The notes beneath the pieces are model-generated. The model saw only the letters and a program-made list of their open reading frames with translations. It was not told the DNA's origin and ran no database searches. Below, piece after piece: positions 1-62,957 of a DNA stretch of 64,000 nucleotides (its first letter is position 1; the number at the start of each line of letters is the position of its first letter). The translations under genes and the position numbers were made by a program. The stretch spans positions 124,001 to 188,000 of the IMG/VR virus record IMGVR_UViG_3300009158_000031. One strand, 5' to 3'.

Positions 1-2
1 TC

Positions 3-3063: not shown

Positions 3064-4854
3064 ATGTTTAAAGTAAAAGAATATAAAGAGGAAAATTCAG
3101 AAGATAACAAAGTAATTTGGACATCTGCAAAAGTTGAAAAACTTCTTGTGGCAATGGAAGAAGGATATGCTACGGTTGACCATCCATTTTATGAAGGTGA
3201 TCCTAGTTATCGAAAAGGAAATATTGTATTTGAATATAGTGATTGGGAATATGAAGAGATAAAGAAATGTGCTAAGGATATCATTCACTTTGCCAATCAT
3301 TATTGTACGGTAATGACAGATGAAGGTTACATGAAAATCGAACTTCGTCCATATCAAGAAGATGTACTTCGATCATATCAAGCAAATCGTTGGAATATCT
3401 TTATGGCATCTCGTCAAATAGGTAAAACTATTACATCTTCTATATTTTTAACATGGTATCTTCTATTTCACTTTGATAAAAATGTACTCCTTATGTCTAA
3501 TAAAGGAGCAACCACTAAAGAGATTATGGATAAGATCAAAGCAATCGTTGAAGGTCTTCCATTCTTCTTAAAACCTGGTGTTAATAAGAAAGACGTTATG
3601 ACAATGATATTCGATAATAAATGTCGTATCATTGGTCAGAATACTACAAAAACCGGTGGTATTGGATTTACCATCCATTTGCTATTTATAGATGAGTTTG
3701 CTCACATTCCAGAAGGAATTAAGAGAACCTTCTATGAAAACGTATATCCAACTTTATCATCATCCAAAATATCCAGGGTTATAATCACAAGTACACCTAA
3801 TGGATTTGATCTATTTCATGATTTATATTCATCTGCTATGGATGGATCTAATGAGTATAAAGCAATGAGAGTTGATTGGTGGCAAGTTCCAGGTAGAGAT
3901 GAAGAATGGAAAGAACGAGAGATAGCAAATTTAGGTTCGTTAGAAGCTTTTAATCAACAATATGGTTGCCAATTTCTTTCATCTTCTAATTTACTTCTTT
4001 CATCCGATGAATTAAAAAGACTTAAGCGAGATGAAGCAGAATATATCTTTCAGGAATTTGATGCTTTAGATGATTTAGGTTTGGATTATTCTCAGCTTAA
4101 ATGGCATCCTGATTTTGATATATTAGATATCGACGATCCAAATAAATTCTTCATATTTGCCATTGATTTGGCTGAAGGAATAGGACGAGATCATTCTATC
4201 ATAAATATATTTGAACTTGATTCGTTAACGTATGAAGATATTGAAAAATTAGAATCGCCAGGAGGAATAACGGATTTCTTTTCATTAAGACAAGTTGGTT
4301 TATTTAGATCTAATATACATCCAATAGAAAGTTTTGCAAAAATTCTTTATACGATGTCTGTGAAAATTTTTGATCAGGAAAATCTACGACATGTAATTGA
4401 ATATAATGTTTATGGTGCTGAGTTAATGAAAAACTTAATTACGTTATATCCATCATCCAATGATTTTGATGAGGATTGTGTAGTTAGGTATCATCATAGA
4501 GTCGGTGCTAAAGTTAAACAACCCGGACTTAGATTAAATAAAGATTTGAAGAAAATTTATTGTGAAAAGATGAAAGCTTTGATAATGTCTGGAAAAATTC
4601 AATTAAACGAGAGACAATCTATACAAGAGGCTTCTATGTTTTCTAGAAATCCTTCTGGAACATATTCAGCTCAAACTGGCCATGATGATATTATTATGTC
4701 GGCGGTTTCTGTATCTTCTTTCTTCGATACTTTAGATTTTGCAGACATCGTAGAAGAGTATTTCGAATTCCTCGATGGTGAGAAAGTCGCTAAAATAGAA
4801 CAGATCCTAGATGAACTAGGAGACGATACAGGGGAAATATATGATATTTTTTAG
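3064..4854 (+). CDS. terL: Terminase large subunit (T4 gp17-like)
   Basis: LRPYQ, Walker A ASRQIGKT, Walker B LFIDEFAH, ITSTPNG, nuclease AIDLAEG and GHDDIIMS. Confidence 0.96.
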   Translation: MFKVKEYKEENSEDNKVIWTSAKVEKLLVAMEEGYATVDHPFYEGDPSYRKGNIVFEYSDWEYEEIKKCAKDIIHFANHYCTVMTDEGYMKIELRPYQEDVLRSYQANRWNIFMASRQIGKTITSSIFLTWYLLFHFDKNVLLMSNKGATTKEIMDKIKAIVEGLPFFLKPGVNKKDVMTMIFDNKCRIIGQNTTKTGGIGFTIHLLFIDEFAHIPEGIKRTFYENVYPTLSSSKISRVIITSTPNGFDLFHDLYSSAMDGSNEYKAMRVDWWQVPGRDEEWKEREIANLGSLEAFNQQYGCQFLSSSNLLLSSDELKRLKRDEAEYIFQEFDALDDLGLDYSQLKWHPDFDILDIDDPNKFFIFAIDLAEGIGRDHSIINIFELDSLTYEDIEKLESPGGITDFFSLRQVGLFRSNIHPIESFAKILYTMSVKIFDQENLRHVIEYNVYGAELMKNLITLYPSSNDFDEDCVVRYHHRVGAKVKQPGLRLNKDLKKIYCEKMKALIMSGKIQLNERQSIQEASMFSRNPSGTYSAQTGHDDIIMSAVSVSSFFDTLDFADIVEEYFEFLDGEKVAKIEQILDELGDDTGEIYDIF

Positions 4855-4881
4855 TCATCTATCACATATCAGAAAAACCCA

Positions 4882-4889
4882 GATATATA
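4882..4889 (+). promoter_or_regulatory. Representative T4-like late promoter variant RATA(A/T)ATA (also at 1741, 8219, 8883, 17657, 24760, 46152, 53260, 53880, 54721, 55554, 58853)
   Basis: Octamer lies a few to about 35 bp before starts of structural and CTS genes. T4 late consensus is TATAAATA. The AT-rich background limits significance. Confidence 0.45.
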
Positions 4890-4908
4890 ATTAAAAAATT
4901 AAAGACCC

Positions 4909-7900
4909 ATGGCAATATCTCCTAGTCTACAACAATTCAAATCTTCAGGTGTTTACCGATTAGAATTCGACAAGAGTCAAATTACTAATATTCCATCTGA
5001 AACAATCCGTTTAATTATCGGATTCTCAAAAAAAGGACCTTTTAATACTCCTGTTCTTTGTAAAGACACCGTCTTCTTTAAAGAAATTTTTGGAGATATT
5101 GATACTTCTCTTGAAAGAAAAGGTTCGTTCTTCCATAGAACGGCTCTAGTTTCTCTTGATAGAGGTCCAGTTATTGTATTGAATCTTTTGAATCTTGACG
5201 ATACTCTAGATCAATCACAATTCCGCTCAATCTCTACTGCTTCTTGGCAAGCTAATTCAGCGGTTAAGTATGCTCCAGTATCAAATTATTTCAACCAAGA
5301 TAAATTCTGGTTCACTGATGCTCAAGCTCTTATTGACACTGCAGATAATTCTGATTATCAATCAGTTTTAGCTCAAAGATTACTTAACCTTGCAAATGTT
5401 GGTAGAAAAAACATGTCAGTTTTTACTAAAAAATCTACAACTTTAGGTTTCGATATTTTAGCTAAAGATTGGTACGGAACTGGTAAAGTTCCAGAATTCA
5501 TTAACGAAAATGATTACATCTCTGATTATATGGTAGATTTGATTATCGTTGAAGGTGACTTCTCTAATTATCAATCTCTTGCAATCGATCCAATTTATGG
5601 AACTTATTTCGATGCAACTGGTTTAAAAACTACTATCACTGATTCTTATGGAAATATTTTAGATGGTTTAACTGCATTCTTAAACTTAAATTCAGTTAAT
5701 GTACTAGGTGTTTATACTGGTTGTTTAATTCCAGAATTCCAAGATAAAAATGGTAATAACCTTTTCATTCAAGATCTAGTTAATCTAGAAACTTCTAAGA
5801 CTGGTTTGCTATTAGGAATTAATGTAGATACTATTGATGATGCTCCTGAAACTATTGGAAACGATTTAATTGACTTAATTGGTCATGGTATCGAATCTCA
5901 AGAACCTACAGTAGTAGACTTCCTTTCTTATTATGGTTCTATTGTTTCTGCAATGCCTTATGCCGGAGCTACCGGTATCGATACTCTTATCGTTGCTGGA
6001 ACTGCTGGTCAAACTGGTGCTCAGGCATTAATGATTGCTTCTGCTGGTTTAACTGGAGCTTCTGCTACAAACGGTTGGAAAACTACAACAGGTCATTATG
6101 ATACTTTATTGGTATATGGTCCTTCTGCTACTCTTCCCACTTCATTTGCATCTAAATTTGCTAACGAAACAGCATTCGCTACTTTCCGTACTGCCGTTTC
6201 AGTGGATAATACATTCATTAAAGCTGGTGCTTCAGCGAATACAACTGGTGCTTCAGGTAACTACTCTTATTTAGCTTCCGAATCTTATGATACTACAACT
6301 GATATCTTAACACTTAAGATCTCTAACGTTGCTGGTTCTGGTGTTACTGGTCCTACTTCAGTTGCTCAAGGTTATTATTACTTATACCCAGTTGGTTTAA
6401 CCGCTGGTGGTACTGCTTCATTACCGGTTATCCAATCAGTGAATTTCAATTTTGCTGAAGGTGGTAATTTGTTTACTGGTGTTGCAAATCAACTTTATCA
6501 AGATAATCTTTCTGGTATTTTAACTGATGGAGATAAAGTTAAAGTTAATAATGCAGGTGCTACTGCTACTGCTTATGCTGAATTTAACCGAGTATCTACT
6601 AATGACTTTAGTGGTGCTACATTTACTAACGCTAATGCTTTTGGTAATGAAGCTCCTATTCTAAATGCATTTACTAATTACATTGAAGTTAATGCTTATA
6701 CAAATCCTAACTTATCTACTGGAGCTACTGCAATTACTCCGCAAACTACTTATGTGGTAAATACTTTAACCGGTAATATCAACGAATCTTTCGCTCTATG
6801 GGGTGGAACTGCCTATACAAATCCTACTAACGTAGTTTGGGTAGATAATGGTTCTACTGGTCCTCTTGGATTAAATGGTTTCAATGGTCTAATCATTAAA
6901 AATCAATTATTGCTTCAGAACTTTGGCGGAACTGGTGGTGCTACATCTAACAGTCCTATTACTGGAAAATCAAGATTAACTCGCATCCTTTCAGTTGCTG
7001 AAATTACCGATCCTACATCTGATCTTTACAAAAAGATCAAGATTACTACAGTAGATCCCATCTTTATTTCTGCAACAAGTGAAATTGAAAGATATAAAGA
7101 GGCTTCTAATTTTGTTACTCACTACAGACCTTCTGCTCTTAGAGGTTATACTTTAAGAACTGGTCAAATGCCTGATGGTACTGATACTCGTCAAAATGAA
7201 ATTCTAGACGTTATGTATAACAGTAATATCGCGGCTGCTCTTGCTGATCGTGAAACTATTAGTTTCCGTTATATTATCGATTCATTCCAAGGAACAATCG
7301 AACCTTCAACGAAGATTCGTTTAACTAAACTTGCTAAGAATCGTCAATCTGCTTTAGCAATTGTCAATATGCCTTCAGTGAAACAATTTAAAGATAGTAC
7401 TAACCCTATATTCAAATTAACTTCATCTTCTCAATTCGATGCTGCTTATATTGCTGATGGTGGTAATCTATCAACAAATCCTTCAAACATATTCAGCTTA
7501 CCAGGTATTGCTGATGGTGGTAATTACTCCGCTTTCTATGGTCCTAACTTGACTATCAGAGAAGCCGGTAAAAACACTTCAGTTCCTCCTGCTGCTCATG
7601 TTGGTAACTTATACATTGACAAATACACTCAAGCCCTTCCTTATTCAATTATCGCTGGTCCTCGTAGAGGTGTGATAACAGGAACTGGTCTTGTAGGTGT
7701 TGAATACAATTTTGATAGAACCGATCTAGATTCAATTGAACCATTTGGTTACAATGCAATCGTTAACAAGAGAGGTTTTGGATTAACTATTAATGCCAAT
7801 CAAACTGCTCAACAAACTGTAAAATCTGCTCTTTCACAAATTCACGTAAGAGAGTTATTAATTTACATTCAAGATGGTATTGAGGCTATCCTTAAAAATT

Positions 7901-8160
7901 ACCGTTGGGAATTCAACAGTGCTAATAATCGTTTAGAAATTAAAACTTTAGCCGACAATTTCCTATCACAAATCCTTTCTGATGGTGGAGTTTACGACTT
8001 CCAAAACATTATGGATACAACTAACAATACGACTGAGATCATCGATAACAATTATGGAATCCTTGATACTTACATCGAACCTGTTAGAGGAATGGGTATC
8101 TTAGTTCACAGAACTACAATTCTAAGAACTGGTGCTATTTCAACTGGTAACTTTATTTAA
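4909..8160 (+). CDS. gp18: Tail sheath protein (T4 gp18-like) with a large Gly/Ala/Thr-rich central insertion
   Basis: N-terminal SGVYRLEFDKS and IIGFSKKGPFNTP; C-terminal SALSQIHVRELLIYI..WEFN and DFQNIMDTTNNT..IIDNN..IEPVRGM; 1083 aa. Confidence 0.95.
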   Translation: MAISPSLQQFKSSGVYRLEFDKSQITNIPSETIRLIIGFSKKGPFNTPVLCKDTVFFKEIFGDIDTSLERKGSFFHRTALVSLDRGPVIVLNLLNLDDTLDQSQFRSISTASWQANSAVKYAPVSNYFNQDKFWFTDAQALIDTADNSDYQSVLAQRLLNLANVGRKNMSVFTKKSTTLGFDILAKDWYGTGKVPEFINENDYISDYMVDLIIVEGDFSNYQSLAIDPIYGTYFDATGLKTTITDSYGNILDGLTAFLNLNSVNVLGVYTGCLIPEFQDKNGNNLFIQDLVNLETSKTGLLLGINVDTIDDAPETIGNDLIDLIGHGIESQEPTVVDFLSYYGSIVSAMPYAGATGIDTLIVAGTAGQTGAQALMIASAGLTGASATNGWKTTTGHYDTLLVYGPSATLPTSFASKFANETAFATFRTAVSVDNTFIKAGASANTTGASGNYSYLASESYDTTTDILTLKISNVAGSGVTGPTSVAQGYYYLYPVGLTAGGTASLPVIQSVNFNFAEGGNLFTGVANQLYQDNLSGILTDGDKVKVNNAGATATAYAEFNRVSTNDFSGATFTNANAFGNEAPILNAFTNYIEVNAYTNPNLSTGATAITPQTTYVVNTLTGNINESFALWGGTAYTNPTNVVWVDNGSTGPLGLNGFNGLIIKNQLLLQNFGGTGGATSNSPITGKSRLTRILSVAEITDPTSDLYKKIKITTVDPIFISATSEIERYKEASNFVTHYRPSALRGYTLRTGQMPDGTDTRQNEILDVMYNSNIAAALADRETISFRYIIDSFQGTIEPSTKIRLTKLAKNRQSALAIVNMPSVKQFKDSTNPIFKLTSSSQFDAAYIADGGNLSTNPSNIFSLPGIADGGNYSAFYGPNLTIREAGKNTSVPPAAHVGNLYIDKYTQALPYSIIAGPRRGVITGTGLVGVEYNFDRTDLDSIEPFGYNAIVNKRGFGLTINANQTAQQTVKSALSQIHVRELLIYIQDGIEAILKNYRWEFNSANNRLEIKTLADNFLSQILSDGGVYDFQNIMDTTNNTTEIIDNNYGILDTYIEPVRGMGILVHRTTILRTGAISTGNFI

Positions 8161-8172
8161 TATTTGAATGAA

Positions 8173-8196
8173 GCTGGGATTCGCAAGGATCCCAGC
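8173..8196 (+). other. GNRA-capped hairpin between sheath and tube genes (mRNA stabiliser/processing site or weak terminator)
   Basis: gctgggattc-GCAA-ggatcccagc: 10-bp stem with one G.U pair, no U-tract. Confidence 0.55.
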
Positions 8197-8254
8197 CAAT
8201 TCATTTACGAATCAGTAAGATAAATAATAAAATACACAAAAAAAGCAATATACA

Positions 8255-8809
8255 ATGCCAGGATTACCACATTTTCTAAACAGTAAAGCGGCTACTAAAT
8301 ACTACGAACCGTTTTATCAAAACTTGTTTGAGGTAAACATTCTTCCTCCTTCTACTATTTCTGGTGGAGAGATCTTGATTGAACACGTAAATAAAATCGG
8401 CGGTTTAACTCAAGATAGAGGTTCAGAAGCAACCACTCAATCATACAAATTCGCTAAGAGATCTTACGCAATGGGAACTCCTACAGATACCATTACAGAT
8501 TTAACAATCGGTTTCTCTCTTAACTTAAACGATGCAAACGAACTATACGTATATAAAACATTACGTGATTGGTTCCGTTTGATCTATAACCCACTTACTG
8601 GTGAACAAGGTTTGAAGAAAGATTATGTAGGTACTCTCGTTATTACAAACTATAATCGTGCCGGAGATATCTTCTGGCAACGTACTTTCCATGATTGTTT
8701 CCCTACTGGAGATATCGGTGAATTAGCTGCAGATTACTCAGGTGGTGAAAAAGTTGATATGCCAGACGTTAAATTTCGTTCTGATTGGTGGGAAGAGAAC
8801 ATCGTTTAA
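8255..8809 (+). CDS. gp19: Tail tube protein (T4 gp19-like)
   Basis: YKTLRDWFRLIYNPLTG..YVGTLVITNYNRAGDIFWQRTFHDCFP; 184 aa directly after the sheath. Confidence 0.9.
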   Translation: MPGLPHFLNSKAATKYYEPFYQNLFEVNILPPSTISGGEILIEHVNKIGGLTQDRGSEATTQSYKFAKRSYAMGTPTDTITDLTIGFSLNLNDANELYVYKTLRDWFRLIYNPLTGEQGLKKDYVGTLVITNYNRAGDIFWQRTFHDCFPTGDIGELAADYSGGEKVDMPDVKFRSDWWEENIV

Positions 8810-8830
8810 TTTCAATCTATTAAGACTTTT

Positions 8831-8861
8831 AAAGAGAACTTCGAAAGAGGTTCTCTTTTGT
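8831..8861 (+). terminator. Rho-independent terminator after tail tube
   Basis: aaagagaacttc-GAAA-gaggttctcttt followed by tgtt. Confidence 0.75.
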
Positions 8862-8918
8862 TGTATATTCATATAAGTAAGAGATAAATATAATAACGAA
8901 AAAAAATTATATTTAAAA

Positions 8919-9182
8919 ATGGGTGAAACGTCGGTTGTTGGTATAATTTTAGCACTAATCGGTATATTTAAAGGAAAAGACATATGGGAATTCTTTAAAC
9001 ATCGAGCTACTATTAAAAGTAAAACTAATGACAAGGTCATTGAGATTTATGAAAAACAACTAAATACTTGCGAAACTAAAGTTCAGCTTTTAGAAACAAA
9101 AAATGATAAATTGTCTAAGAGATTTGAAACTAAATTGAAGAGTCGAGGAAAAACCAAAGAAGAACCTCTTAAAAAAGATTAA
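8919..9182 (+). CDS. Small membrane protein with coiled coil (holin/spanin-like, unassigned)
   Basis: N-terminal hydrophobic helix VVGIILALIGIF, then a heptad-rich C-terminus. Confidence 0.35.
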   Translation: MGETSVVGIILALIGIFKGKDIWEFFKHRATIKSKTNDKVIEIYEKQLNTCETKVQLLETKNDKLSKRFETKLKSRGKTKEEPLKKD

Positions 9183-9185
9183 AAT

Positions 9186-9449
9186 ATGAAAAACTACATA
9201 AACACATTTGAAGAGTTCTTAAATGAATCAATTAACGAAAATGTTTGGGCAGATATAACTAAATCAGCAAAACCTACTAAAGGTCCTTGGACTCTAGTAT
9301 CATCTGATAATAAAAAAGTTTTAGCCCAGAGCACAACTGATAATATACACATGCTTCCTGCTCATTTTGAATCACTGAAACTAAAATTTCCAAAATCAAG
9401 TATTCATATAGAAAGTGCTTCCGGTGAAGTAATTTGGAAAATGAAATAA
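9186..9449 (+). CDS. Putative internal head protein with capsid-targeting sequence (CTS 1)
   Basis: Starts MKNYINTFEEFLNESINE; compare the T4 IPII/IPIII CTS MKTYQEFIAE. Confidence 0.65.
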   Translation: MKNYINTFEEFLNESINENVWADITKSAKPTKGPWTLVSSDNKKVLAQSTTDNIHMLPAHFESLKLKFPKSSIHIESASGEVIWKMK

Positions 9450-9454
9450 TCAAT

Positions 9455-9910
9455 ATGAAAAATTACATAAACACATTTGAAGGTTTCTTAAATGAAGTTC
9501 GATTAAATGAAGATAAAATGCCGGTAGTTTCGGACTTTAAAGCTAACCCAACCGTATTGGATGGTGTTAAAATTAAAAACCTAGCCGAAGAAAATCCTGA
9601 ACAGGTGTTCATTATAAAGAAGGAATATGGCAAATGGCCTGATGATATACTTGCTAAATACAGCAAAACAGAAACTTCGATAACTGAATTTCTACCAATC
9701 GATAAATATGCTACAATGACAAAGTTAGAGTACTTAGGTTCTATGGCTGAAGTTATTGATATGATGTTCGGAGCTGACGAATGGCCACCAGCTAAACAGA
9801 AAGAACTTGCAAATGAACCATACTTATCTACTAATAAACAAGGAGAAGTTATAATAGATGTTCAACGAGGAAATATCAGTAAGTTTGTAAAATTAGCAGA
9901 AAAAAAGTAA
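9455..9910 (+). CDS. Putative internal head protein (CTS 2)
   Basis: True start is ATG 9455: MKNYINTFEGFLNEVRLNE. Confidence 0.65.
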   Translation: MKNYINTFEGFLNEVRLNEDKMPVVSDFKANPTVLDGVKIKNLAEENPEQVFIIKKEYGKWPDDILAKYSKTETSITEFLPIDKYATMTKLEYLGSMAEVIDMMFGADEWPPAKQKELANEPYLSTNKQGEVIIDVQRGNISKFVKLAEKK

Positions 9911-9920
9911 TTTAACTAAT

Positions 9921-10526
9921 ATGAAAAATTACATAAACACATTTGAAGGCTTCTTAAATGAATCTAAATACAAAGGAAATATCTCAGGAGATTCTGCTGA
10001 ATATATTGCTAAAGAAATGTCACAATATGTTAAAGGCATAATTAAACAGCCTAATGATAATGTTACTTACTTCCATTTAAAAGATAAATCCGGCAAATCA
10101 AAAGTTATTAAAACCTTATTAGATGTTTATGGATTAGAAGCAGTAGATGGTGGAAATCAATTTTCTCCATCACCTACTATTAAATTTGATAACGATCAAC
10201 TTCTTGAATCCCTTAGATCAGGTCCTAATGATGCTAAAATATATCCCATTAAAAAAGGAAGTGATCCAGAAGATCTTCTTTCCGGTAGATCTAGAGGATC
10301 ATGGGTAAGTTCAAAAACCATTAATGATATATTAGACGTTTTTGGTAAGGAAATGACCATTTATAAAGGTGACGAAATCACAGAATTCCTTCAAGTTAAT
10401 AGCCGAGATAATAGTGACATATATAAAATAGTTAGACGAGATTTAAGAGGACCTAGAACGGTTGGTTATATCCCTTCATATTATCAGAATTTTGACCAAA
10501 CCGAAGAAATAAACAATACTCGTTAA
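9921..10526 (+). CDS. Putative internal head protein (CTS 3)
   Basis: MKNYINTFEGFLNES; a possible second internal site at QLLES. Confidence 0.65.
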   Translation: MKNYINTFEGFLNESKYKGNISGDSAEYIAKEMSQYVKGIIKQPNDNVTYFHLKDKSGKSKVIKTLLDVYGLEAVDGGNQFSPSPTIKFDNDQLLESLRSGPNDAKIYPIKKGSDPEDLLSGRSRGSWVSSKTINDILDVFGKEMTIYKGDEITEFLQVNSRDNSDIYKIVRRDLRGPRTVGYIPSYYQNFDQTEEINNTR

Positions 10527-10527
10527 T

Positions 10528-11010
10528 ATGAAAAACCACATAAACACATTTGAAGGATTCTTAAATGAAGCTCGATTAAATGAAAGCAAACCTGCTATGA
10601 TGTACTATGTAGTAGCCAAGGATGTCATTAAGGATAGAAGACTTAAAGTATATCCTGAAAACATCGAAAGACTTTTGAACAACTTACAAGCAGACGGACA
10701 TTTATCATATGATGCAACGATAACATCAGATGCAAAGAAAGATATTGAAAACGCATTAGATAAGTTAGACTTGAAAGGGAATGAATTGCTTTCATATGCA
10801 AGAAAAGGCATGAAGTACGAAAGTGAAGATGTTAATGAAGCCAATCAAATTAAAGTTGGAACTTTTGTTAGATACAAAAAAGACGAAGATTTTACTGGTG
10901 GTAAGATCAAATCTATAAGTTCTGGTAAAGCAGAAATACATAATTGGGATGGTTCAACAACAGAACTTCCACTTAAAGATCTTGAATATATTGAGTCTTG
11001 GAATAATTAA
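10528..11010 (+). CDS. Putative internal head protein, two modules (CTS 4)
   Basis: MKNHINTFEGFLNEARLNE; internal EDVNE followed by a small SH3/Tudor-like beta module (IKVGTFVRY..GKIKSI..AEIHNWDG). Confidence 0.65.
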   Translation: MKNHINTFEGFLNEARLNESKPAMMYYVVAKDVIKDRRLKVYPENIERLLNNLQADGHLSYDATITSDAKKDIENALDKLDLKGNELLSYARKGMKYESEDVNEANQIKVGTFVRYKKDEDFTGGKIKSISSGKAEIHNWDGSTTELPLKDLEYIESWNN

Positions 11011-11013
11011 AAT

Positions 11014-11421
11014 ATGAAACCTATCAAACTATATAAAGAGTTTATTAATGAGGCAAAAGACGTTGATTCGGCAATGAAGAAAATCGATGATTTGCCAAAA
11101 GGATCAACCTTTGAAGATGCCAAAAGAATAGATCGTATTTTTGATATCAGTAAACATAGTTGGAGTGAGGTTGTGGAAACTTTTGAAAAGAATCAAAAAT
11201 CCGCAAAGATTAAACCGATAAATATAAAAGACATACAAATAACTCAACCAAATATCCAGAGCAATAAAGTGAAAGCCATGATTGAGAAATTTGATAAATT
11301 ACCTACAATTAATGCAGTTCAATTTCCGGATGGAATATCCATATATGATGGACATCATCGTCTATTAACTGCTTGGTCAATAGGAGAAACACGAATCAAA
11401 GTTAATCTTGTAAAAATATGA
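11014..11421 (+). CDS. CTS-bearing ParB/Sulfiredoxin-fold protein (CTS 5)
   Basis: MKPIKLYKEFINE, then INIKDIQITQPNI and IYDGHHRLLTA (ParB/Srx DGxHR motif). Confidence 0.7.
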   Translation: MKPIKLYKEFINEAKDVDSAMKKIDDLPKGSTFEDAKRIDRIFDISKHSWSEVVETFEKNQKSAKIKPINIKDIQITQPNIQSNKVKAMIEKFDKLPTINAVQFPDGISIYDGHHRLLTAWSIGETRIKVNLVKI

Positions 11422-11648
11422 AACACCTACACACATACAAAGAGTTCTTATTCGAGTCAACGATTTCCGAAATGAAGATAACTTCAGTTGGCGTTAAAGA
11501 GATTCTTAAGAAGCTTTATGACGATGCTAAACTTACAAAAGCATTACATTTTAAAAACTTCCGAGATGCACTCGATTCTATTCTTGGATATAGTCAAACG
11601 GAATTAGAAGAATTAGAAACAGAGATAAAAGAACTAGAGCACGCTTAA
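11418..11648 (+). CDS. Putative internal head protein (CTS 6)
   Basis: MKHLHTYKEFLFESTISE. Confidence 0.6.
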   Translation: MKHLHTYKEFLFESTISEMKITSVGVKEILKKLYDDAKLTKALHFKNFRDALDSILGYSQTELEELETEIKELEHA

Positions 11649-11670
11649 GATAATTTAAAAAATAAAAAAC

Positions 11671-12501
11671 ATGAAACATACACAAACATTCAAAGAGTTC
11701 TTAAATGAACAAGAAGAGATACTTAATGAAGATAGTTCTCTTGCACTTATGGTAATACTGCAAGCGGCTATAGTTAATGGACTTCTAATAGGTCAAATGG
11801 CGGCTAGTGGTGGTGGAGATGGCTTTCATCCTATCGATGATTTAAAAGCTTGGTGGGCGAAACGTAAAAAAGATAAAGCTGTAAAAAGTATTGTTGATAA
11901 ATTAAAAGAAGATCCTGAAGTTTTAGCCTTTTTGAAAATGTCAAATTGGGCACAAAAAGGAAAATGGTATAAACTTATTGAACCTAAACTTAATGACGAA
12001 GAGAAAAAATATCTAAAAAGTATTTCAAGAACTCCATTTATGAATGAGGAAGTTAATGAAAATTCCGCAATCCTTCTTGATCTTTCTGATAAGCAGTTGG
12101 CACTTTCTATAAAGGCTAAATTACCAGCCAAGTATAAAAAAGATACGAAGACTTTAATATACAATGCTCCATATTCAATGGTTTCTCATGGTGCTAAACT
12201 TACAAACCTTCCAACTCCTTCACGAGTATATCAATTGGAAAAAATGAATGAAACTTATAGAGGATCTGATAATTGGATATCTTTATCTTCATTAGCTATT
12301 GTACAAGATACAACCAATCAAGTTACTTTTGTAATTGTATATGAAGAATTTGATCCAATTCAATTTGATGAAATAAAATCAAATAAAGATTTGTACAAAG
12401 AAGAGGATTATAAAGACGAAAAAGATTTGCTTAAAAAGATGCAAACTTGGTTTGCTTATTCTGAAAAGGTCTTTAAAGAAGTAATAGAAGATCACTCATA
12501 A
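11671..12501 (+). CDS. Putative internal head protein, two modules (CTS 7)
   Basis: MKHTQTFKEFLNEQEEILNE; hydrophobic segment LALMVILQAAIVNGLLIG; internal FMNEEVNE linker. Confidence 0.6.
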   Translation: MKHTQTFKEFLNEQEEILNEDSSLALMVILQAAIVNGLLIGQMAASGGGDGFHPIDDLKAWWAKRKKDKAVKSIVDKLKEDPEVLAFLKMSNWAQKGKWYKLIEPKLNDEEKKYLKSISRTPFMNEEVNENSAILLDLSDKQLALSIKAKLPAKYKKDTKTLIYNAPYSMVSHGAKLTNLPTPSRVYQLEKMNETYRGSDNWISLSSLAIVQDTTNQVTFVIVYEEFDPIQFDEIKSNKDLYKEEDYKDEKDLLKKMQTWFAYSEKVFKEVIEDHS

Positions 12502-12512
12502 AAAAACATAAT

Positions 12513-12989
12513 ATGAAACATATACTCACATTCAAAAACTTCTTAAACGAGGAAAGAGTTTATGGAATGTTCAATGATTCTCAAGGAAAACCATCTAAAC
12601 TTTCACAAGAGATTTTAGATATTTGTCTAAAAGCACTACCTAAATATGTAATAGATAATATTGAATCAGTTGAAGCTTCCGGTTATTCTAAGACAAATTT
12701 AGCATCACCTCCTACGGTTAGTAATAAAGGTCAATCAAGAGGTGAAAATGATTATACGACTATTGTTCTAATATTCAAAAATCCAATGGGAAAATCTAAA
12801 ACAACTGAATTGACGGTTGGATTAAGAAAAAGAACTTCTGGACCAGGAACTGGTTATCTTGCGGTTAAACCTACTGCAAATGGTCATTATGTTTTACCTG
12901 AACATAGTGCCGCAATTGAATTTTATGATGCAGCGCCTGAAAGTTTAGCGGATTTATATAAGAGTACACTAGAAAAATTAATGAAATAA
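12513..12989 (+). CDS. Putative internal head protein (CTS 8)
   Basis: MKHILTFKNFLNEE. Confidence 0.65.
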   Translation: MKHILTFKNFLNEERVYGMFNDSQGKPSKLSQEILDICLKALPKYVIDNIESVEASGYSKTNLASPPTVSNKGQSRGENDYTTIVLIFKNPMGKSKTTELTVGLRKRTSGPGTGYLAVKPTANGHYVLPEHSAAIEFYDAAPESLADLYKSTLEKLMK

Positions 12990-12990
12990 T

Positions 12991-13353
12991 ATGAAACATA
13001 TACCAACATTCGATAATTTCCTAAATGAAGGAACCATCATGATTTTTCACTACTCAAAGAAATCTTCAGAGATTGATGGTGACGTGAAAGAATTACAGAA
13101 GAAAGCTCAAGAATTTATTAAAATCGCAAGAGACAAAGATTACAATATATCTTCTAACGATTCCGTACTTTATTTTCCAAATTTTAAATGGGCAGGAGGT
13201 AAACAAATCTTTGGACCATCATTAGGTATTAAAGCAGGATCAGAAACAATGCTAATTAATCCAATAGGCTCTGATAAAATAATCAAGATTAGCGAAGGCT
13301 TGCTTGTTCGTTTTGTAAAAGACGGCAGAATCGAATCATATAATTTATACTAA
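12991..13353 (+). CDS. Putative internal head protein (CTS 9)
   Basis: MKHIPTFDNFLNEG. Confidence 0.65.
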   Translation: MKHIPTFDNFLNEGTIMIFHYSKKSSEIDGDVKELQKKAQEFIKIARDKDYNISSNDSVLYFPNFKWAGGKQIFGPSLGIKAGSETMLINPIGSDKIIKISEGLLVRFVKDGRIESYNLY

Positions 13354-13354
13354 T

Positions 13355-13603
13355 ATGAAACATATACTCACATTCAAAAACTTCTTAAATGAAGGATTCA
13401 AGAAACCTTATAGCGAAAAAATGAGCCTTGAGGATTTTTCTGCTATAGAAGTTGGAAGTGAGGTTCTTTATGCTGGAGCAACTTACGAAGTGGTTAACAA
13501 CGATGGTGCAACTCTTCAATTAAAACCGGCTAAAGGTGCTAATGGTAAAGCGACTAAAGTTAATTTCTCAATGTTTAATGTTGCTGGAGCAATCCGCGAT
13601 TAG
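13355..13603 (+). CDS. Putative internal head protein (CTS 10)
   Basis: MKHILTFKNFLNEG; SH3-like cargo (IEVGSEVLYAGATYEVV). Confidence 0.65.
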   Translation: MKHILTFKNFLNEGFKKPYSEKMSLEDFSAIEVGSEVLYAGATYEVVNNDGATLQLKPAKGANGKATKVNFSMFNVAGAIRD

Positions 13604-13688
13604 TTGAATCTTCATAAATTTCAAATCATATAATTAAAATTATAAGTCTAAGGATATGATCTGCTTATAGTAAAAAATATCATATGTT

Positions 13689-15050: not shown

Positions 15051-16000
15051 AAGTAGCTATTCTAAATTGTTCAGATATTGCAAAACGAAGAATGATTCCG
15101 GCATTTCAGGCAATACCTGAAGTTGAAGTTTCTATCGTATGTAGCCGAGATATTCGTAGAGCTAAACAATATGCTGAAGAATTTGGAATCCCAAAATATA
15201 CGGATAATCCAGATGAAATTATTGGAGTTGATCTAGTTTATATTTCATCTCCTCCATCTGAACATTTTGATGCGATTAAAACATTTATAAAGAGAAAAAT
15301 TAATATTCTTTGCGAAAAATCTCTTACCATAGATGCATATCAAACAACCTATCTAATTAATCTAGCCGATAAACAAGGAGTTCTTATACAAGAAAATTAT
15401 GGATTTCCTTTTCATACTCAGTGGAAATGGATAAAAGAAAACCTAAATAAAATAGGAGATCTTCTTTACATAAGAAGTGGATTTGAATTTCCTCCAAGAA
15501 ATACCGAAACAGATTTTCGTTACAAATCTGCTCTCGGTGGTGGTGCTCTTTTCGATGCCGGTGGATATCCTATTAAATTAGCCTCTTTATTATTGGGAAC
15601 TCCTCAAAAACTTGATGCAGTTACTCATATATCAAAATCACTTGATATTGATCTTTCTGGAAGAACATTTATTATTGATGAAACTGGAAAATCTGCATTT
15701 TTAACTTGGAGTTTTGAATCTACTTATCGTTGTGATGTAGAAATTGTAGGAACTCAAGGAACAATTAAAGCTGGTAAGATATTTACTCCTAGAATTGATG
15801 AACATGTTGAAGTGTCAATTTCACTTATTGGAGAGCCGGTAGAAAGACAACAATTTGTTTGCGATCATTTCGTTGAACTTATTCGAGATTTTATAAATAG
15901 AATAAAGATTAAAGATAACTCTCATCATAAAAGTATATTAAAACAATCAAAATGGCAAACATATGTATCGTCTACTAGTATCAGAACCTTCACTAACTAA
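15047..16000 (+). CDS. Gfo/Idh/MocA oxidoreductase, likely NDP-sugar 3-ketoreductase (SpnN/KijD10-like)
   Basis: CSDIAKRRMIPA, ILCEKSL, GGGALFDAGGYP; coupled to the 2,3-dehydratase by an ATGA overlap. Confidence 0.82.
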   Translation: MKVAILNCSDIAKRRMIPAFQAIPEVEVSIVCSRDIRRAKQYAEEFGIPKYTDNPDEIIGVDLVYISSPPSEHFDAIKTFIKRKINILCEKSLTIDAYQTTYLINLADKQGVLIQENYGFPFHTQWKWIKENLNKIGDLLYIRSGFEFPPRNTETDFRYKSALGGGALFDAGGYPIKLASLLLGTPQKLDAVTHISKSLDIDLSGRTFIIDETGKSAFLTWSFESTYRCDVEIVGTQGTIKAGKIFTPRIDEHVEVSISLIGEPVERQQFVCDHFVELIRDFINRIKIKDNSHHKSILKQSKWQTYVSSTSIRTFTN

Positions 16001-17045: not shown

Positions 17046-17046
17046 G

Positions 17047-17661: not shown

Positions 17662-17684
17662 ATAACAAAATACAACATATATTA

Positions 17685-22933: not shown

Positions 22934-22937
22934 ATAT

Positions 22938-36581: not shown

Positions 36582-36586
36582 TAATC

Positions 36587-36916: not shown

Positions 36917-36935
36917 TTAAAAAAATTAAAACAAA

Positions 36936-37232: not shown

Positions 37233-37242
37233 ACCAAAATTT

Positions 37243-61433: not shown

Positions 61434-62957
61434 ATGAAACCTATTAAAAACTACAACGAATTCATTAATGAAGCATGGATTGGTCCATTCGTATTCAATG
61501 AAGACATGACCGATGATGAACTAAAGGCTATATACCAAGGTGCATTAGATGGATTTGCTTATTGGCAAAAAGGATTTGAATATCCAAAAGCCGATTACAA
61601 AAAGGCATATACTGAAATTGGAAAGATTCTAAAGAAAAGAGGAGTTAATGTTGATGAATCTGTTAATGAAGGATCTAACGACGAAATGGTAAAACGGAGT
61701 TGTGTCGAAAGACTTTCTCAATTCTTTAGAGTTAGTCCAAACGCATTATCACATTTCAAATTTGATGGAACCGATAACATTAAAGCTTTAACAAAAGCTC
61801 TTAATTCTACATCAGATGAAGGAACCGAGGCATACTATAAAGTAGCAATCCGAGTTGGAAAACAAGATGCCGGTATCGAAGAATCTATCGAGGAATCAGC
61901 TAAATGTCCTCCTATATACATTCCGGTATTATCTAATATCGATCATACTAGAATAATCAAATGGATGGATATTCATTTTGATAGTCATAAATGGGATATG
62001 AAGAAATCCGGTGCTGGTTTTGAAATCGATGTTGAAAAACTATCTAGTCAAGAACAAGATGATTTATTAAAATATTTACACTCACAAGATTATTTAGAAG
62101 AATCTGTTAATGAAGCTTGGAGTAATATAGACACCGACAAAGCTGCCGATCTAATCAATAAAGAAATTGGAGTTAATCCTGGTTATTTCTTTATTGGCGA
62201 TGAAGATTTATGCATCAAATTTGATAAATTATGGACTGAAAAGAAATACAAAGTAGCTCTTAATATGTTATTTTTTATTGAAAATCTAAAAGATCTTAAA
62301 GACTTCATAAAACAAAACCAAAACGAATCGGTTAATGAAGCAGTATCACCAGAAGTACATCGTATGGTTAATAAATTTGTAACCGGTATGGCTGATAAAT
62401 ATGATTATTCTTTACAAGATGCAGTTTATGCAATACTAGACGTTTTAAAAAGTCAAAAATATAAAGGATTAAAAGAATCTGTTAATGAAGGTGAAACTTT
62501 AATATTTGATGAGATCGGAGAAAACCTAACCAAACTTCAGGATCAAATAGATGCAATGCTTAAATGGGAAATCACCGATCAAAAATGGATCGTTGCACTT
62601 AAAACAATTCAATCTGCCTGTTCTAAATTGGAAGATACTGTCGCTAAAGCTGATCAGAAATTAGGTGCTATTGAATATAATGAATCCATTAGTGAAGGTC
62701 TTTTAAAATTAGATGAAGGTGCTGTTAAACAATTTGAGATCGATTATAAAGACATGGAAAGTAGTATCAAACGAGGTATTGGTTGGATTGATCCTGAATA
62801 TGTGGCTGAAACTTGGGAGAATTCTTCAGATACTATTGATTATGAAATAGTTAGAAATGAAATTCTTACTCGTCTAATTAAAGCCGATCTTCTTTATACA
62901 TCACTAGATGGAGAAACTAAAGGTAAAAGAATTACCAACATAAGTCAAATTAAATAA
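61434..62957 (+). CDS. CTS-bearing multi-module polyprotein with ES(V/I)(N/E/S)E linkers
   Basis: True start ATG 61434: MKPIKNYNEFINE; linkers DESVNE, EESIEE, EESVNE, NESVNE, KESVNE, NESISE. Confidence 0.75.
   Translation: MKPIKNYNEFINEAWIGPFVFNEDMTDDELKAIYQGALDGFAYWQKGFEYPKADYKKAYTEIGKILKKRGVNVDESVNEGSNDEMVKRSCVERLSQFFRVSPNALSHFKFDGTDNIKALTKALNSTSDEGTEAYYKVAIRVGKQDAGIEESIEESAKCPPIYIPVLSNIDHTRIIKWMDIHFDSHKWDMKKSGAGFEIDVEKLSSQEQDDLLKYLHSQDYLEESVNEAWSNIDTDKAADLINKEIGVNPGYFFIGDEDLCIKFDKLWTEKKYKVALNMLFFIENLKDLKDFIKQNQNESVNEAVSPEVHRMVNKFVTGMADKYDYSLQDAVYAILDVLKSQKYKGLKESVNEGETLIFDEIGENLTKLQDQIDAMLKWEITDQKWIVALKTIQSACSKLEDTVAKADQKLGAIEYNESISEGLLKLDEGAVKQFEIDYKDMESSIKRGIGWIDPEYVAETWENSSDTIDYEIVRNEILTRLIKADLLYTSLDGETKGKRITNISQIK
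61656..62490 (+). repeat. 16-bp linker repeats gaatc(t/g)gttaatgaag at 61656, 62100, 62325 and 62475
   Basis: Three identical copies and one with a single substitution; degenerate copies at 61881 and 62682. Confidence 0.92.

What the first reader, a model, noticed from the sequence alone, without database searches (positions are those of the whole stretch)
9186..13603. Ten-gene tandem array of internal-head proteins sharing a T4-type capsid-targeting leader but carrying unrelated cargoes
Seen: ten consecutive ORFs all start MK(N/H/P)x(N/K/H/Q/L/P)(T/L)(F/Y)xxF(L/I)(N/F)E, and then diverge completely. Several repeat LNE/INE/VNE within a few residues or internally. The array sits where T4 has the portal gene, right after the tail tube. 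Established: T4 IPI/II/III use a 10-aa CTS (MKTYQEFIAE), are cleaved after (I/L/F)xE by the prohead protease gp21, and are injected with the DNA; IPI* blocks the GmrSD restriction enzyme. Inference: this is a large, previously unannotated arsenal of injected effectors, likely anti-defence. Across the window about 17-19 genes carry the leader (also 17685, 46176, 53285, 58865, 60375, 60830, 61434, 62957, 63856).
Basis: partly seen in the sequence, partly recalled or inferred. Interest (0 to 1): 0.82.

Follow-up and report, generated by a model that had tools for sequence, protein, structure and literature searches.

The report
Head-targeting leader on ten phage genes
Ten neighbouring genes of an uncultivated giant freshwater phage begin with the same 13-14-residue tag, which closely resembles the tag phage T4 uses to load proteins into its head, so they most likely encode a swappable set of proteins packed with the DNA, though what those proteins do is unknown.

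Summary
Ten consecutive + strand genes (9186-13603) all start with M-K-x-x-x-(T/L)-(F/Y)-x-x-F-(L/I)-(N/F)-E. After that they share no detectable similarity.

The reading as T4-type head-internal proteins is well supported, but only indirectly:
- The same phage (a 254-kb IMG/VR contig) encodes a T4-type portal, a Peptidase_S77 prohead protease fused to a scaffold, and a gp23-type capsid protein that starts MYLINE|SE.
- Leader genes also flank its head genes.
- The four leader positions that never or almost never vary match the four T4 IPIII positions mapped for targeting and processing.
- Codon usage shows the constraint acts on the protein, not the DNA.
- Strain-to-strain indels, metagenomic homologues and joints in lake-sample contigs all place module boundaries exactly at (L/I/V)-N-E sites. 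Many relatives are polyproteins of modules separated by such sites.
- Identical leader DNA coincides with recombination joints.

One cargo has a ParB/sulfiredoxin fold. One begins with a hydrophobic helix. One has a confident fold with no known relative.

Not supported: the count of 17-19 leader genes in the window (11 are robust), and any evidence of anti-defence function. Packaging, cleavage and injection are untested.

I rate this a new variant of a known kind.

The parts
9186..9449 (+). Leader gene 1, 87 aa. Leader at 9186-9227 (MKNYINTFEEFLNE), followed by a second site SINE, then a 69-aa cargo.
   Evidence: The cargo is 40% identical (E 1e-19) to the first module of the 470-aa polyprotein P0067. 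It is also the last module of a 235-aa three-module protein in strain L006.
9455..9910 (+). Leader gene 2, 151 aa. Leader at 9455-9496, followed by a second site VRLNE.
   Evidence: 97% identical at the DNA level to the gene in L006. Present in contigs from lake RNA libraries.
9921..10526 (+). Leader gene 3, 201 aa. Leader at 9921-9962, then two cargo modules joined at QLLE|SLRSG (codon 95/96).
   Evidence: Other strains join the second module in frame directly to this leader (joint 9958>10205) or to the leader of g11014 (joint 11048>10205).
10528..11010 (+). Leader gene 4, 160 aa. Leader at 10528-10569, then ARLNE, then module 1, then EDVNE|, then a small (about 57 aa) C-terminal module.
   Evidence: In L006 the C-terminal module sits behind a different, degenerate leader, as a 76-aa gene at L006:6504. 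There is a weak HAS-barrel hint only.
11014..11421 (+). Leader gene 5, 135 aa. Leader at 11014-11052 (MKPIKLYKEFINE), then a cargo with a ParB/sulfiredoxin-fold domain and an invariant DGHHRL motif.
   Evidence: The top 50 Foldseek PDB hits are dominated by ParB, sulfiredoxin and related chains (best 6sdk_B, E 8.9e-4, probability 1.00). The model has pLDDT 78. At least 260 homologue clusters keep the leader. Atlas evidence. In L006 the module follows another module after LYEEFINE|.
11418..11648 (+). Leader gene 6, 76 aa. Leader at 11418-11456 (ends FLFE), followed by STISE.
11671..12501 (+). Leader gene 7, 276 aa. Leader at 11671-11709, then QEEILNE|. Module 1 starts with a hydrophobic helix (residues 23-41). 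Then FMNEEVNE|, then module 2.
   Evidence: Kyte-Doolittle 19-residue maximum of 2.08. Module 1 has 110 representative homologues, found alone behind a leader or inside polyproteins of up to 751 aa. Joint 11709>12055 removes module 1 in frame.
12513..12989 (+). Leader gene 8, 158 aa. Leader at 12513-12551, then a cargo with a confident alpha/beta fold that has no detectable structural relative.
   Evidence: pLDDT 83.4, pTM 0.79. No significant match in PDB, AFDB clusters or BFVD, and best VIA Z of 6.2. It has 62 homologue clusters; in some of them the module follows other modules after FMNE|, IINE|, AMNE|, LNE| or FINE|.
12991..13353 (+). Leader gene 9, 120 aa. Leader at 12991-13029.
   Evidence: A DNA contig from another sample joins its end to the start of g12513 through 39 nt of shared leader sequence.
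13355..13603 (+). Leader gene 10, 82 aa. Leader at 13355-13393, identical in DNA to the g12513 leader over about 39 nt.
61434..62957 (+). The only other robust leader gene in the window, 507 aa (MKPIKNYNEFINE|A, followed by FVFNE).
   Evidence: 16.4 bits with the clade profile. No Pfam or Atlas family.
3064..8809 (+). Context: large terminase (3064-4854), tail sheath (4909-8160) and tail tube (8255-8809), directly upstream of the array.
   Evidence: PHROG matches. Terminator-like hairpins follow the sheath and tube genes.

Best explanation
The ten genes encode proteins that are loaded into the phage's prohead.

- **Leader.** The 13-14-residue N-terminal leader is a capsid targeting sequence of the T4 kind. 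Consensus: M-K-H-I-K/P-T-F-E-E-F-(L/I/V)-N-E. It is predicted to be helical.
- **Loading (inferred).** The leader is inferred to bind the scaffolding core, so the attached protein is enclosed when the gp23-type shell forms.
- **Cleavage (inferred).** The phage's Peptidase_S77 (T4 gp21-type) protease then cuts after (L/I/V)-N-E, usually before S, A or G. This removes the leader and, in multi-module proteins, separates the modules.
- **Fate (inferred).** The freed cargoes stay in the head with the DNA and, by analogy with T4 IPs and Alt, are expected to leave it at infection.
- **Recombination.** The short, nearly identical leader and linker coding sequence also acts as portable homology. Recombination at it deletes, fuses, reorders and re-leads cargo modules in frame, which makes the locus highly variable between strains.

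Shown here: the shared leader, protein-level constraint, the T4-type head genes in the same genome, leader genes among head genes, xNE at the capsid N-terminus and in the scaffold, module boundaries and recombination joints at xNE, and the ParB/Srx fold of one cargo.

Inferred only: physical packaging, cleavage, ejection and what the cargoes do in the host.
For: 1. **T4-type head in the same contig.** L198 carries Portal_T4 (E 5e-71), Peptidase_S77 (E 6e-13) fused to a scaffold-like C-terminal part, and a Gp23 capsid protein (E 4e-36).

2. **Location.** In this phage, three genes with a canonical leader and two with leader-like N-termini lie just upstream of the head-completion and portal genes, and two more lie downstream of the capsid gene. 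In relatives they lie between the protease and capsid genes. In PAU, ten genes around the portal, protease and capsid genes share their own leader ending in KLNE, and two of them are annotated 'internal capsid protein'.

3. **Match to T4.**
   - T4 IPII and IPIII start MKTYQEFIAE|A.
   - T4 residues 4 and 7 were mapped as needed for targeting, and residues 8 and 10 for processing (PMC9026906).
   - The aligned positions here are the four most conserved: P7 F/Y in 81/82, P4 F in 81/82, P3 L/I/V in 82/82, P1 E in 82/82.
   - The clade profile ranks IPII and IPIII first and second of 34 T4 proteins, and the alignment ends at the T4 cleavage site.

4. **Protein-level constraint.** P4 Phe is encoded TTT 58 times and TTC 58 times. 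P1 is GAA or GAG, P2 is AAT or AAC, and P3 uses Leu, Ile and Val codons with only the middle T fixed. Conservation starts at the ATG; the upstream sequence is not conserved.

5. **The site recurs where a protease site should.**
   - 81 of 92 distinct clade capsid proteins have it within the first 9 residues. The length before it varies and the sequence after it is constant. The window phage has MYLINE|SE.
   - The scaffold part of the protease fusion has 5 [LIF]NE sites in 633 aa, against 0.86 per 1000 aa expected.
   - P1' is S, A or G in 59 of 82 leaders. The related SPN3US protease cuts after A-x-E and prefers Ser at P1' (PMC10052503).

6. **Module boundaries.**
   - A strain whose tube gene is 99% identical carries the same modules as polyproteins or behind other leaders, always joined at xNE or LLE.
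   - The same holds for homologues of g12513 and g11671.
   - 35 long homologues have 6.2 sites per 1000 aa against 1.28 expected, with the context E-(E/S)-S-(V/I/L)-N-E|(A/S/D/G).

7. **Joints in environmental contigs.** Contigs from lake RNA and DNA libraries join leader ends to internal sites in frame (9958>10205, 11048>10205, 11709>12055). One swaps the gene behind a 39-nt identical leader (13350>12509).

8. **One tag, many cargoes.** 152 distinct leader proteins fall into 72 cargo families.
Against: - There is no virion proteomics, no N-terminal sequencing and no isolate, so packaging, cleavage and ejection are all inferred.
- Similarity to the T4 CTS is weak in bits (9.0 and 7.9). Four reversed sequences out of 4261 reach 8 bits. 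Common descent of the leaders is therefore not shown, and convergence on a similar protease and scaffold is possible.
- The array sits next to tail genes rather than head genes.
- Tenacibaculum phage PTm1 has the same S77 protease and gp23-type capsid protein, yet shows no such leader in the roughly 100 kb examined.
- No cargo matches T4 IPs, Alt or any known anti-defence protein.
- The presence of the array in RNA libraries does not prove transcription.
Confidence: 0.75

Rival explanations
1. The proteins are head-targeted and processed as described, but they are not delivered effectors. They would be expendable core or filler components that help build or size the scaffold core, neutralise DNA charge or set internal pressure. 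They would then be degraded or remain inert.
For: - T4 gp22, gp67 and gp68 are core proteins that the protease cuts into fragments, and loss of IPIII slows head assembly (PMC9026906).
- PAU's annotated scaffolding protein gp152 carries the same leader as the other PAU leader genes.
- Several cargoes are small and have no recognisable activity.
- The ParB-like and hydrophobic-helix modules are widely conserved rather than fast-evolving.
Against: - The very high turnover and diversity of cargoes (72 families; the content differs between strains whose tube genes are 99% identical) fits conflict-driven accessory functions better than structural roles.
- Enzyme-like cargoes exist: a ParB/Srx fold and a leader-tagged RimK-type ATP-grasp enzyme elsewhere in the genome.
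- Most cargoes lack internal sites and would survive the protease.
Confidence: 0.15
2. The shared sequence is a nucleic-acid element reused in front of many genes, such as a translation-initiation or mRNA element, or a recombination cassette like the mobile promoter cassettes of T4-type phages. The peptide it encodes would have no function.
For: - Within the array the leader DNA is nearly identical between neighbouring genes (91-98% over about 45 nt; 39 nt identical between g12513 and g13355).
- Recombination joints fall in it.
Against: - Across 118 distinct leader DNA tails, synonymous positions vary freely while the amino acids are fixed (TTT:TTC is 58:58 at P4).
- Nothing upstream of the ATG is conserved.
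- The same peptide motif recurs inside proteins at module junctions and at capsid N-termini, where translation initiation is irrelevant.
- PAU uses a different leader sequence with the same LNE ending.
Confidence: 0.04
3. The leader targets proteins to another destination: the tail or baseplate lumen (given the neighbouring tube gene), the host membrane, secretion, or a degradation pathway.
For: - The array lies between the tube gene and, in relatives, the baseplate hub and tape-measure-like genes.
- One cargo has a hydrophobic helix.
Against: - The leader is acidic and amphipathic. It has no hydrophobic core or lipobox, unlike the true Bacteroidota signal peptides seen elsewhere in the window.
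- The motif's terminal tripeptide recurs on the capsid protein and in the scaffold, and leader genes cluster with head genes.
- No proteolytic processing of this type is known for T4-type tails (own knowledge).
Confidence: 0.05

Closest known systems
Phage T4 internal proteins IPI, IPII, IPIII and Alt, with their capsid targeting sequence (CTS)
   Same: - A short N-terminal leader is shared by unrelated proteins and ends in aliphatic-x-Glu.
- The four T4 positions mapped for targeting (4, 7) and processing (8, 10) correspond to the four most conserved positions here (PMC9026906).
- The genome has a gp21-type S77 protease, a gp20-type portal and a gp23-type capsid protein.
- Cargoes are small, diverse and mostly of unknown function, and there is at least one leader-tagged enzyme elsewhere in the genome (compare Alt).
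   Different: - The leader is 3-4 residues longer, and P2 is almost always Asn.
- The array has ten genes in tandem, and there are more leader genes elsewhere; T4 has three IPs plus Alt.
- Many relatives are polyproteins of up to about eight modules cut at internal sites.
- The protease is fused to the scaffold.
- No cargo is homologous to a T4 IP.
- The host is probably a member of Bacteroidota, and the genome is about 254 kb.
[quoted passage not shown]
   Same: The leader is conserved while the cargo differs between related phages. This has been interpreted as an arms race with host restriction (PMC3012670, PMC9026906).
   Different: - Here the exchange points can be seen directly. They are in-frame joints at the leader or xNE sites, and include leader swapping and gene reordering.
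- Modules also move between single-module genes and polyproteins.
Ejection and inner-body proteins of giant phages phiKZ, 201phi2-1 and SPN3US
   Same: Many head-internal proteins are processed by a gp21-related protease after small/aliphatic-x-Glu, with multiple sites per propeptide. One ejection protein's mature form starts with a transmembrane helix, like module 1 of g11671 (PMC5694885, PMC10052503).
   Different: - Those propeptides are mostly longer than 100 residues, and the motif is S/A/G-x-E or A-x-E.
- There is no common short leader across unrelated proteins.
- The phage lineage is different.
Sphingomonas (Sphingobacterium) phage PAU gp142-gp154
   Same: PAU belongs to the same broad clade (tube 44% identical). 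Ten genes around its portal, protease and capsid genes share a leader ending in KLNE, and gp142 and gp154 are annotated 'internal capsid protein'.
   Different: - The PAU leader (MKTLTQLYEAKLNE) has K instead of F at P4 and is not detected by the profile built here.
- I found no paper describing the PAU leader family.
Phage P1 Dar (defence against restriction) head proteins
   Same: These are accessory proteins packed in the head and delivered with the DNA to protect it (PMC9024508, PMC12810830).
   Different: Incorporation into the P1 head follows a dependency hierarchy rather than a common cleavable short leader (own knowledge). No sequence relationship was tested or seen.

Membership tests
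T4-type CTS-tagged internal head proteins | A short (about 10-20 aa) N-terminal leader shared by otherwise unrelated proteins | tested here: met
   Ten of ten array genes carry it. The profile finds 185 N-terminal hits against 0 in reversed controls. The cargoes are unrelated.
T4-type CTS-tagged internal head proteins | The leader ends in aliphatic-x-Glu, the site type cut by S77 prohead proteases | tested here: met
   P3 is L/I/V in 82/82, P2 is N in 71/82, P1 is E in 82/82, and P1' is S/A/G in 59/82. This is sequence evidence only; cleavage itself was not observed.
T4-type CTS-tagged internal head proteins | Conservation at the positions equivalent to T4 IPIII residues 4 and 7 (targeting) and 8 and 10 (processing) | tested here: met
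   P7 F/Y 81/82, P4 F 81/82, P3 82/82, P1 82/82. The functional mapping comes from PMC9026906.
T4-type CTS-tagged internal head proteins | The genome encodes a gp21-type (Peptidase_S77) protease with a scaffold, a gp20-type portal and a gp23-type capsid protein | tested here: met
   L198, from the same contig: S77 E 6e-13, Portal_T4 E 5e-71, Gp23 E 4e-36.
T4-type CTS-tagged internal head proteins | Statistically secure sequence homology between the leader and the T4 CTS | tested here: inconclusive
   The clade profile scores IPII at 9.0 bits and IPIII at 7.9 bits, the top 2 of 34 T4 proteins. However, 4 of 4261 reversed ORFs reach 8 bits.
T4-type CTS-tagged internal head proteins | Cargo homologous to T4 IPI, IPII, IPIII or Alt | tested here: not met
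   No significant Pfam or PHROG match. The only hint is phrog_2667 'internal head protein' at E 0.05 on g11014.
T4-type CTS-tagged internal head proteins | The proteins are present in virions with the leader removed, and are ejected into the host | not testable with these tools
   This needs virion mass spectrometry and infection assays. No isolate is available.
phiKZ/SPN3US-type ejection proteins | Long (>100 aa) propeptides cut at S/A/G-x-E | tested here: not met
   The leader is 13-14 aa and P3 is L, I or V.
ParB/sulfiredoxin superfamily (g11014 cargo only) | ParB N-terminal/Srx fold with the conserved G-x-x-R loop | tested here: met
   The top 50 Foldseek PDB hits are dominated by ParB, sulfiredoxin and related chains (best E 8.9e-4, probability 1.00). 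DGHHRL is invariant in 40 homologues. ParB_N appears in precomputed Pfam hits and in Atlas clusters. Activity was not tested.
Mobile regulatory DNA cassettes of T4-type phages (repeat conserved as DNA) | Conservation lies in non-coding DNA and at the nucleotide level | tested here: not met
   The upstream sequence is not conserved. Synonymous sites vary freely while the amino acids are fixed.

The most novel reading that the evidence does not exclude
The leader plus (L/I/V)-N-E sites would form a general 'plug-and-play' packaging code in a large clade of Bacteroidota jumbo phages.

- Any domain placed behind a leader or between two sites would be loaded into the head, released by the protease and delivered to the host with the DNA.
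- The repeated coding sequence itself would drive in-frame cassette exchange.
- The 70 or more cargo families would then be a largely unexplored arsenal of injected first-minute effectors. These would include new anti-defence proteins, enzymes (ParB/Srx, ATP-grasp) and a membrane-inserting module.
Probability: 0.35. Interest if true: 0.8.

Novelty: new variant of a known kind. Interest (0 to 1): 0.62.

Why it matters
If the model holds, four things follow.

- **Reach of the T4 mechanism.** The T4 capsid-targeting mechanism would extend far beyond the T-even phages, into an abundant, uncultivated clade of freshwater and gut-related jumbo phages of Bacteroidota.
- **A sequence rule for annotation.** The rule (leader plus xNE sites) picks out head-internal, probably injected proteins directly from metagenomes. 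It splits polyproteins into functional modules and yields dozens of candidate early effectors for testing against defence systems.
- **A way to evolve.** One short motif would serve as packaging tag, protease site and recombination site at once.
- **A possible tool.** It suggests a tag for loading foreign proteins into phages of Bacteroidota, as the T4 CTS has been used in E. coli.

Tried and rejected
- **Megablast of 4909-13700 against phage records:** no match. Relatives were reachable only by protein search.
- **Pfam and PHROG scans of the ten proteins:** nothing significant except a weak ParB hint. PDB sequence search of g11014: nothing.
- **Fold searches of the confident g12513 model** in PDB, AFDB clusters and BFVD, plus a wide VIA-align scan: no match above noise, best Z 6.2. 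Its function remains unknown.
- **Atlas search** of g12513 and of 61434: nothing usable.
- **Promoter motifs.** The T4 late-promoter motif TATAAATA is not enriched (10 found against 13.7 expected). Sigma-70-like sites are not enriched either. I make no statement about promoters.
- **Walking upstream.** The first 10 kb upstream of the window held RNA and nucleotide-metabolism genes, not head genes. Two more steps were needed to reach the head module.
- **PTm1.** It has the S77 protease and gp23-type capsid protein but shows no such leader in the two 50-kb stretches examined. The leader is therefore not universal in the wider group.
Four of them are kept only as a looser variant.
- **A purely DNA-level repeat** is rejected on codon evidence.
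- **Not done:** the remaining roughly 160 kb of the contig was not fetched, so the genome-wide number of leader genes is unknown.

Full report
**1. What is there**

The window is part of a 254-kb IMG/VR contig from a freshwater metagenome (IMGVR_UViG_3300009158_000031). Nearly all genes are on the + strand and G+C is about 32%.

Genes 3064-8809 encode the large terminase, a tail sheath and a tail tube. After a small membrane-anchored protein (8919-9182) come ten tightly packed genes starting at 9186, 9455, 9921, 10528, 11014, 11418, 11671, 12513, 12991 and 13355.

All ten start with M-K-x-x-x-(T/L)-(F/Y)-x-x-F-(L/I)-(N/F)-E. After the Glu they have no detectable similarity to each other (best BLASTP E 0.43, best phmmer E 0.043).

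Four of them have a second (L/I)-N-E within seven residues, and three have further internal sites.

**2. Is it more than chance, and is it protein or DNA?**

- A profile of the ten leaders finds 190 hits of 10 bits or more among 4261 ORFs of related loci. Of these, 185 are N-terminal, and reversed sequences give none.
- A broader profile finds 304 hits (281 N-terminal), again with none in the reversed control at that score.
- In the DNA alignment, conservation begins at the ATG and stops at the Glu codon. Upstream sequence is not conserved.
- Across 118 distinct leader DNA tails, the amino acids are fixed while synonymous sites vary. The invariant Phe at P4 is TTT 58 times and TTC 58 times. 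P1 is GAA or GAG, P2 is AAT or AAC, and P3 uses Leu, Ile and Val codons with only the middle T constant.

The constraint is therefore on the peptide.

In the window itself only one more gene, at 61434, carries a robust leader (16.4 bits). Four of them (17685, 58865, 62957, 63856) have a looser variant ending in LNE or LSE.

**3. What phage is it?**

The tube protein finds only distant relatives among sequenced phages: an uncultured 462-kb phage LR756500.1 (48%), Sphingomonas phage PAU (44%), the Lak megaphages of Prevotella (42%), and Tenacibaculum, Chryseobacterium and Flavobacterium phages. PAU's host is in fact a Sphingobacterium (PMC3738902).

A window protein with a type IX secretion sorting domain also points to a Bacteroidota host.

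I walked upstream along the same contig and reached the head module (L198). It has a T4-type portal (Portal_T4, E 5e-71), a 633-aa protein with an N-terminal Peptidase_S77 domain (E 6e-13) and a long scaffold-like tail, and a gp23-type major capsid protein (E 4e-36). This agrees with the published placement of this group among jumbo phages that have the gp20 portal and the gp21-type protease (PMC7824862).

**4. Evidence linking the leader to the head**

(a) *Location.*
- In this phage, three genes with a canonical leader and two with leader-like N-termini sit immediately upstream of the head-completion and portal genes. Two more sit downstream of the capsid gene.
- In many relatives, leader genes lie between the protease and capsid genes.
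- In PAU, ten genes around the portal, protease and capsid genes begin with a PAU-specific leader (MKTLTQLYEAKLNE). They include the annotated scaffolding protein and two genes annotated 'internal capsid protein'.
- In LR756500.1, three genes with leader-like N-termini lie downstream of the tube gene (after one intervening ORF); two of them match the leader pattern used.

(b) *The cleavage-type tripeptide occurs where a prohead protease must act.*
- The capsid protein of the window phage starts MYLINE|SE. Of 92 distinct capsid proteins in the clade, 81 have the motif within the first nine residues. Several of the rest have PINE or QINE. The stretch before the site varies in length and the sequence after it is constant.
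- The scaffold part of the protease fusion has five [LIF]NE sites. Expected from composition is 0.86 per 1000 aa, and the window background outside N-termini is 1.7 per 1000.

(c) *Match to T4.*
- T4 IPII and IPIII, read from NC_000866, start MKTYQEFIAE|A.
- Aligned from the cleavage site, T-Y-Q-E-F-I-A-E matches the clade consensus T-F-E-E-F-L-N-E.
- In T4, targeting depends mainly on residues 4 and 7, and processing on residues 8 and 10 (PMC9026906).
- The equivalent positions here are the four most conserved: P7 (F/Y 81/82), P4 (F 81/82), P3 (L/I/V 82/82) and P1 (E 82/82).
- The clade profile ranks IPII (9.0 bits) and IPIII (7.9 bits) first and second among 34 T4 proteins, with the alignment ending at the T4 cleavage site. 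These scores are near the noise level of a large search. I therefore treat common descent of the leader as open.

(d) *Site preference.* The residue after the site is S, A or G in 59 of 82 leaders. The related SPN3US protease cuts after A-x-E and prefers Ser at P1' (PMC10052503).

**5. Natural experiments that mark xNE as a boundary**

*Strain comparison.* A strain whose tube gene is 99% identical (L006/L007) has a different array:
- Its first gene is a 235-aa protein made of leader, module A, IVNE|, module B, VINE|SAVNE|, and then the cargo of window gene 9186.
- Its 252-aa gene is leader, an extra module, LYEEFINE|, and then the ParB-like cargo of window gene 11014.
- The second module of window gene 9921 (after QLLE|) follows the leader directly in L006.
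- The C-terminal small module of window gene 10528 (after EDVNE|) has its own leader in L006.

*Homologues of g12513.* These show the module behind a leader, or behind other modules after FMNE|, IINE|, AMNE|, LNE| or FINE|. One (P0002) is module 1 of g11671 fused to the g12513 cargo.

*Homologues of g11671 module 1.* There are 110 representatives at the 50% identity level. They occur alone behind a leader, or inside polyproteins of up to 751 aa with about eight sites.

*Site density.* In 35 such long proteins the sites occur at 6.2 per 1000 aa against 1.28 expected, in the context E-(E/S)-S-(V/I/L)-N-E|(A/S/D/G).

*A shared polyprotein.* The g9186 cargo is 40% identical (E 1e-19) to the first module of P0067.

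**6. Recombination at the leader**

Contigs from lake metatranscriptome and metagenome runs, laid on 8800-13700, show joints at the leader or linker:
- 9958>10205 joins the g9921 leader in frame to its second module.
- 11048>10205 puts the same module behind the g11014 leader.
- 11709>12055 joins the g11671 leader to its second module.
- 13350>12509 places the g12513 gene after g12991. The join runs through 39 nt that are identical in the leaders of g12513 and g13355.

So the repeated leader and linker coding sequence marks the places where modules are deleted, fused, re-led and reordered, always in frame.

The array is present in contigs of RNA libraries at 95-99% identity. This is compatible with transcription but does not prove it.

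**7. The cargoes**

Across the fetched loci, 152 distinct leader proteins fall into 72 cargo families. For the window genes:
- **g11014** has a ParB/sulfiredoxin-fold domain. The model has pLDDT 78. The top 50 Foldseek PDB hits are dominated by ParB, sulfiredoxin and related chains, the best with E 8.9e-4 and probability 1.00. DGHHRL is invariant. At least 260 homologue clusters keep the leader.
- **g11671 module 1** begins, right after the predicted cut, with a strongly hydrophobic helix followed by a basic region. This resembles the SPN3US ejection protein gp47, whose mature form starts with a transmembrane segment (PMC5694885).
- **g12513** has a confident alpha/beta fold (pLDDT 83, pTM 0.79) with no significant structural relative in four libraries. 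In that model the leader is a low-confidence helix.
- **The other seven** have no informative match.
- **Elsewhere in the same genome**, a 501-aa RimK-type ATP-grasp enzyme carries the leader. It recalls T4 Alt, a packaged enzyme.

Nothing points specifically to anti-defence.

**8. Most likely mechanism**

The leader binds the scaffold core, so the protein is enclosed in the prohead. The S77 protease cuts after (L/I/V)-N-E, removing the leader and separating the modules. The cargoes remain with the DNA and probably leave with it at infection. The repeated coding sequence promotes cassette exchange.

Shown here: the anatomy, the protein-level constraint, the head machinery, the co-location with head genes, and the boundary and joint evidence. 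Inferred: binding, cleavage, retention, ejection and function.

I put 0.75 on 'head-targeted and protease-processed'. Within that, I put roughly one third to one half on 'injected effectors that act in the host'. The rival explanations (core or filler role, a DNA-level element, another destination) are set out in their own section.

**9. Comparison and novelty**

The principle is established for T4 and the T-even phages: one conserved CTS, diverse internal proteins, and IPI* as an anti-restriction protein (PMC3012670, PMC9026906). Protease-processed ejection proteins are known in phiKZ-like phages (PMC5694885).

New here:
- the clade (uncultivated Bacteroidota jumbo phages related to PAU);
- the scale (a ten-gene array, plus further leader genes near the head genes);
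- the strict L/I/V-N-E site;
- the polyprotein organisation with movable modules;
- direct evidence that the leader and linker DNA marks recombination points.

I found no paper describing this. PAU's GenBank record does already label two such genes 'internal capsid protein'. My verdict is a new variant of a known kind.

Noticed in passing
L188:4547-6049 (same contig, upstream of the window): A 501-aa RimK-type ATP-grasp enzyme (Pfam RimK E 2e-34, plus a weak Zn_protease hit) starts with the leader MMNLKYFSDFVNE|A. It would be a leader-tagged enzyme, reminiscent of T4's packaged Alt.
   Followed up: partly
window 13689-18566; 47692-52713; 57260-58441; 60830-61417: These regions encode sugar-nucleotide and glycosyltransferase genes: an NDP-hexose 2,3-dehydratase, DegT-type aminotransferases, an epimerase, several GT2-type glycosyltransferases and a cytidylyltransferase. 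They may serve DNA or virion glycosylation. PAU DNA is reported to be heavily modified (PMC7824862).
   Followed up: partly
window 34659-41617: A run of predicted secreted proteins with Bacteroidota-type signal peptides. 34659-36578 has a cohesin domain and a type IX secretion C-terminal sorting domain. 39723-40712 has a C-type lectin domain. This is unusual cargo for a phage and a clue to the host.
   Followed up: partly
window 17685-18566: A 293-aa protein with a weak GT2 match starts MEFLKYNNFILNE. Homologues in L043 and L044 start MEFLKYEDFLFE. This is a looser leader variant, below the profile's noise level, so its status is undecided. Similar looser N-termini occur at 58865, 62957 and 63856.
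   Followed up: partly
window 21098-24296 and 30024-30770: A topoisomerase II split into two genes (T4-like large and medium subunits), and a PhoH-like ATPase.
   Followed up: no
window 8173-8196 and 8831-8858: Strong terminator-like hairpins lie directly after the sheath and tube genes. The array, together with the small membrane protein gene at 8919, may therefore be its own transcription unit.
   Followed up: no
L107 (PAU 105921-125654): PAU gp142-146, gp149, gp150, gp152 (annotated scaffolding), gp153 and gp154 share their own leader, MK(T/S)L(T/S)xL(Y/F)E.., several of them ending in KLNE. The PAU capsid protein has KLNE at about residue 20.
   Followed up: partly
L006:6738-7496: The extra first module of the 252-aa protein in a sister strain contains a Cys...His pattern (DGHCYSF ... 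HAWVLHKGKCYD) that could be a small peptidase-like or metal-binding domain. It is absent from the window.
   Followed up: no
window 1-1550: The first ORF of the window is cut by the window edge. In the contig it is a 609-aa protein that starts about 280 nt before the window (L091:9653-11482). No family match was found.
   Followed up: no
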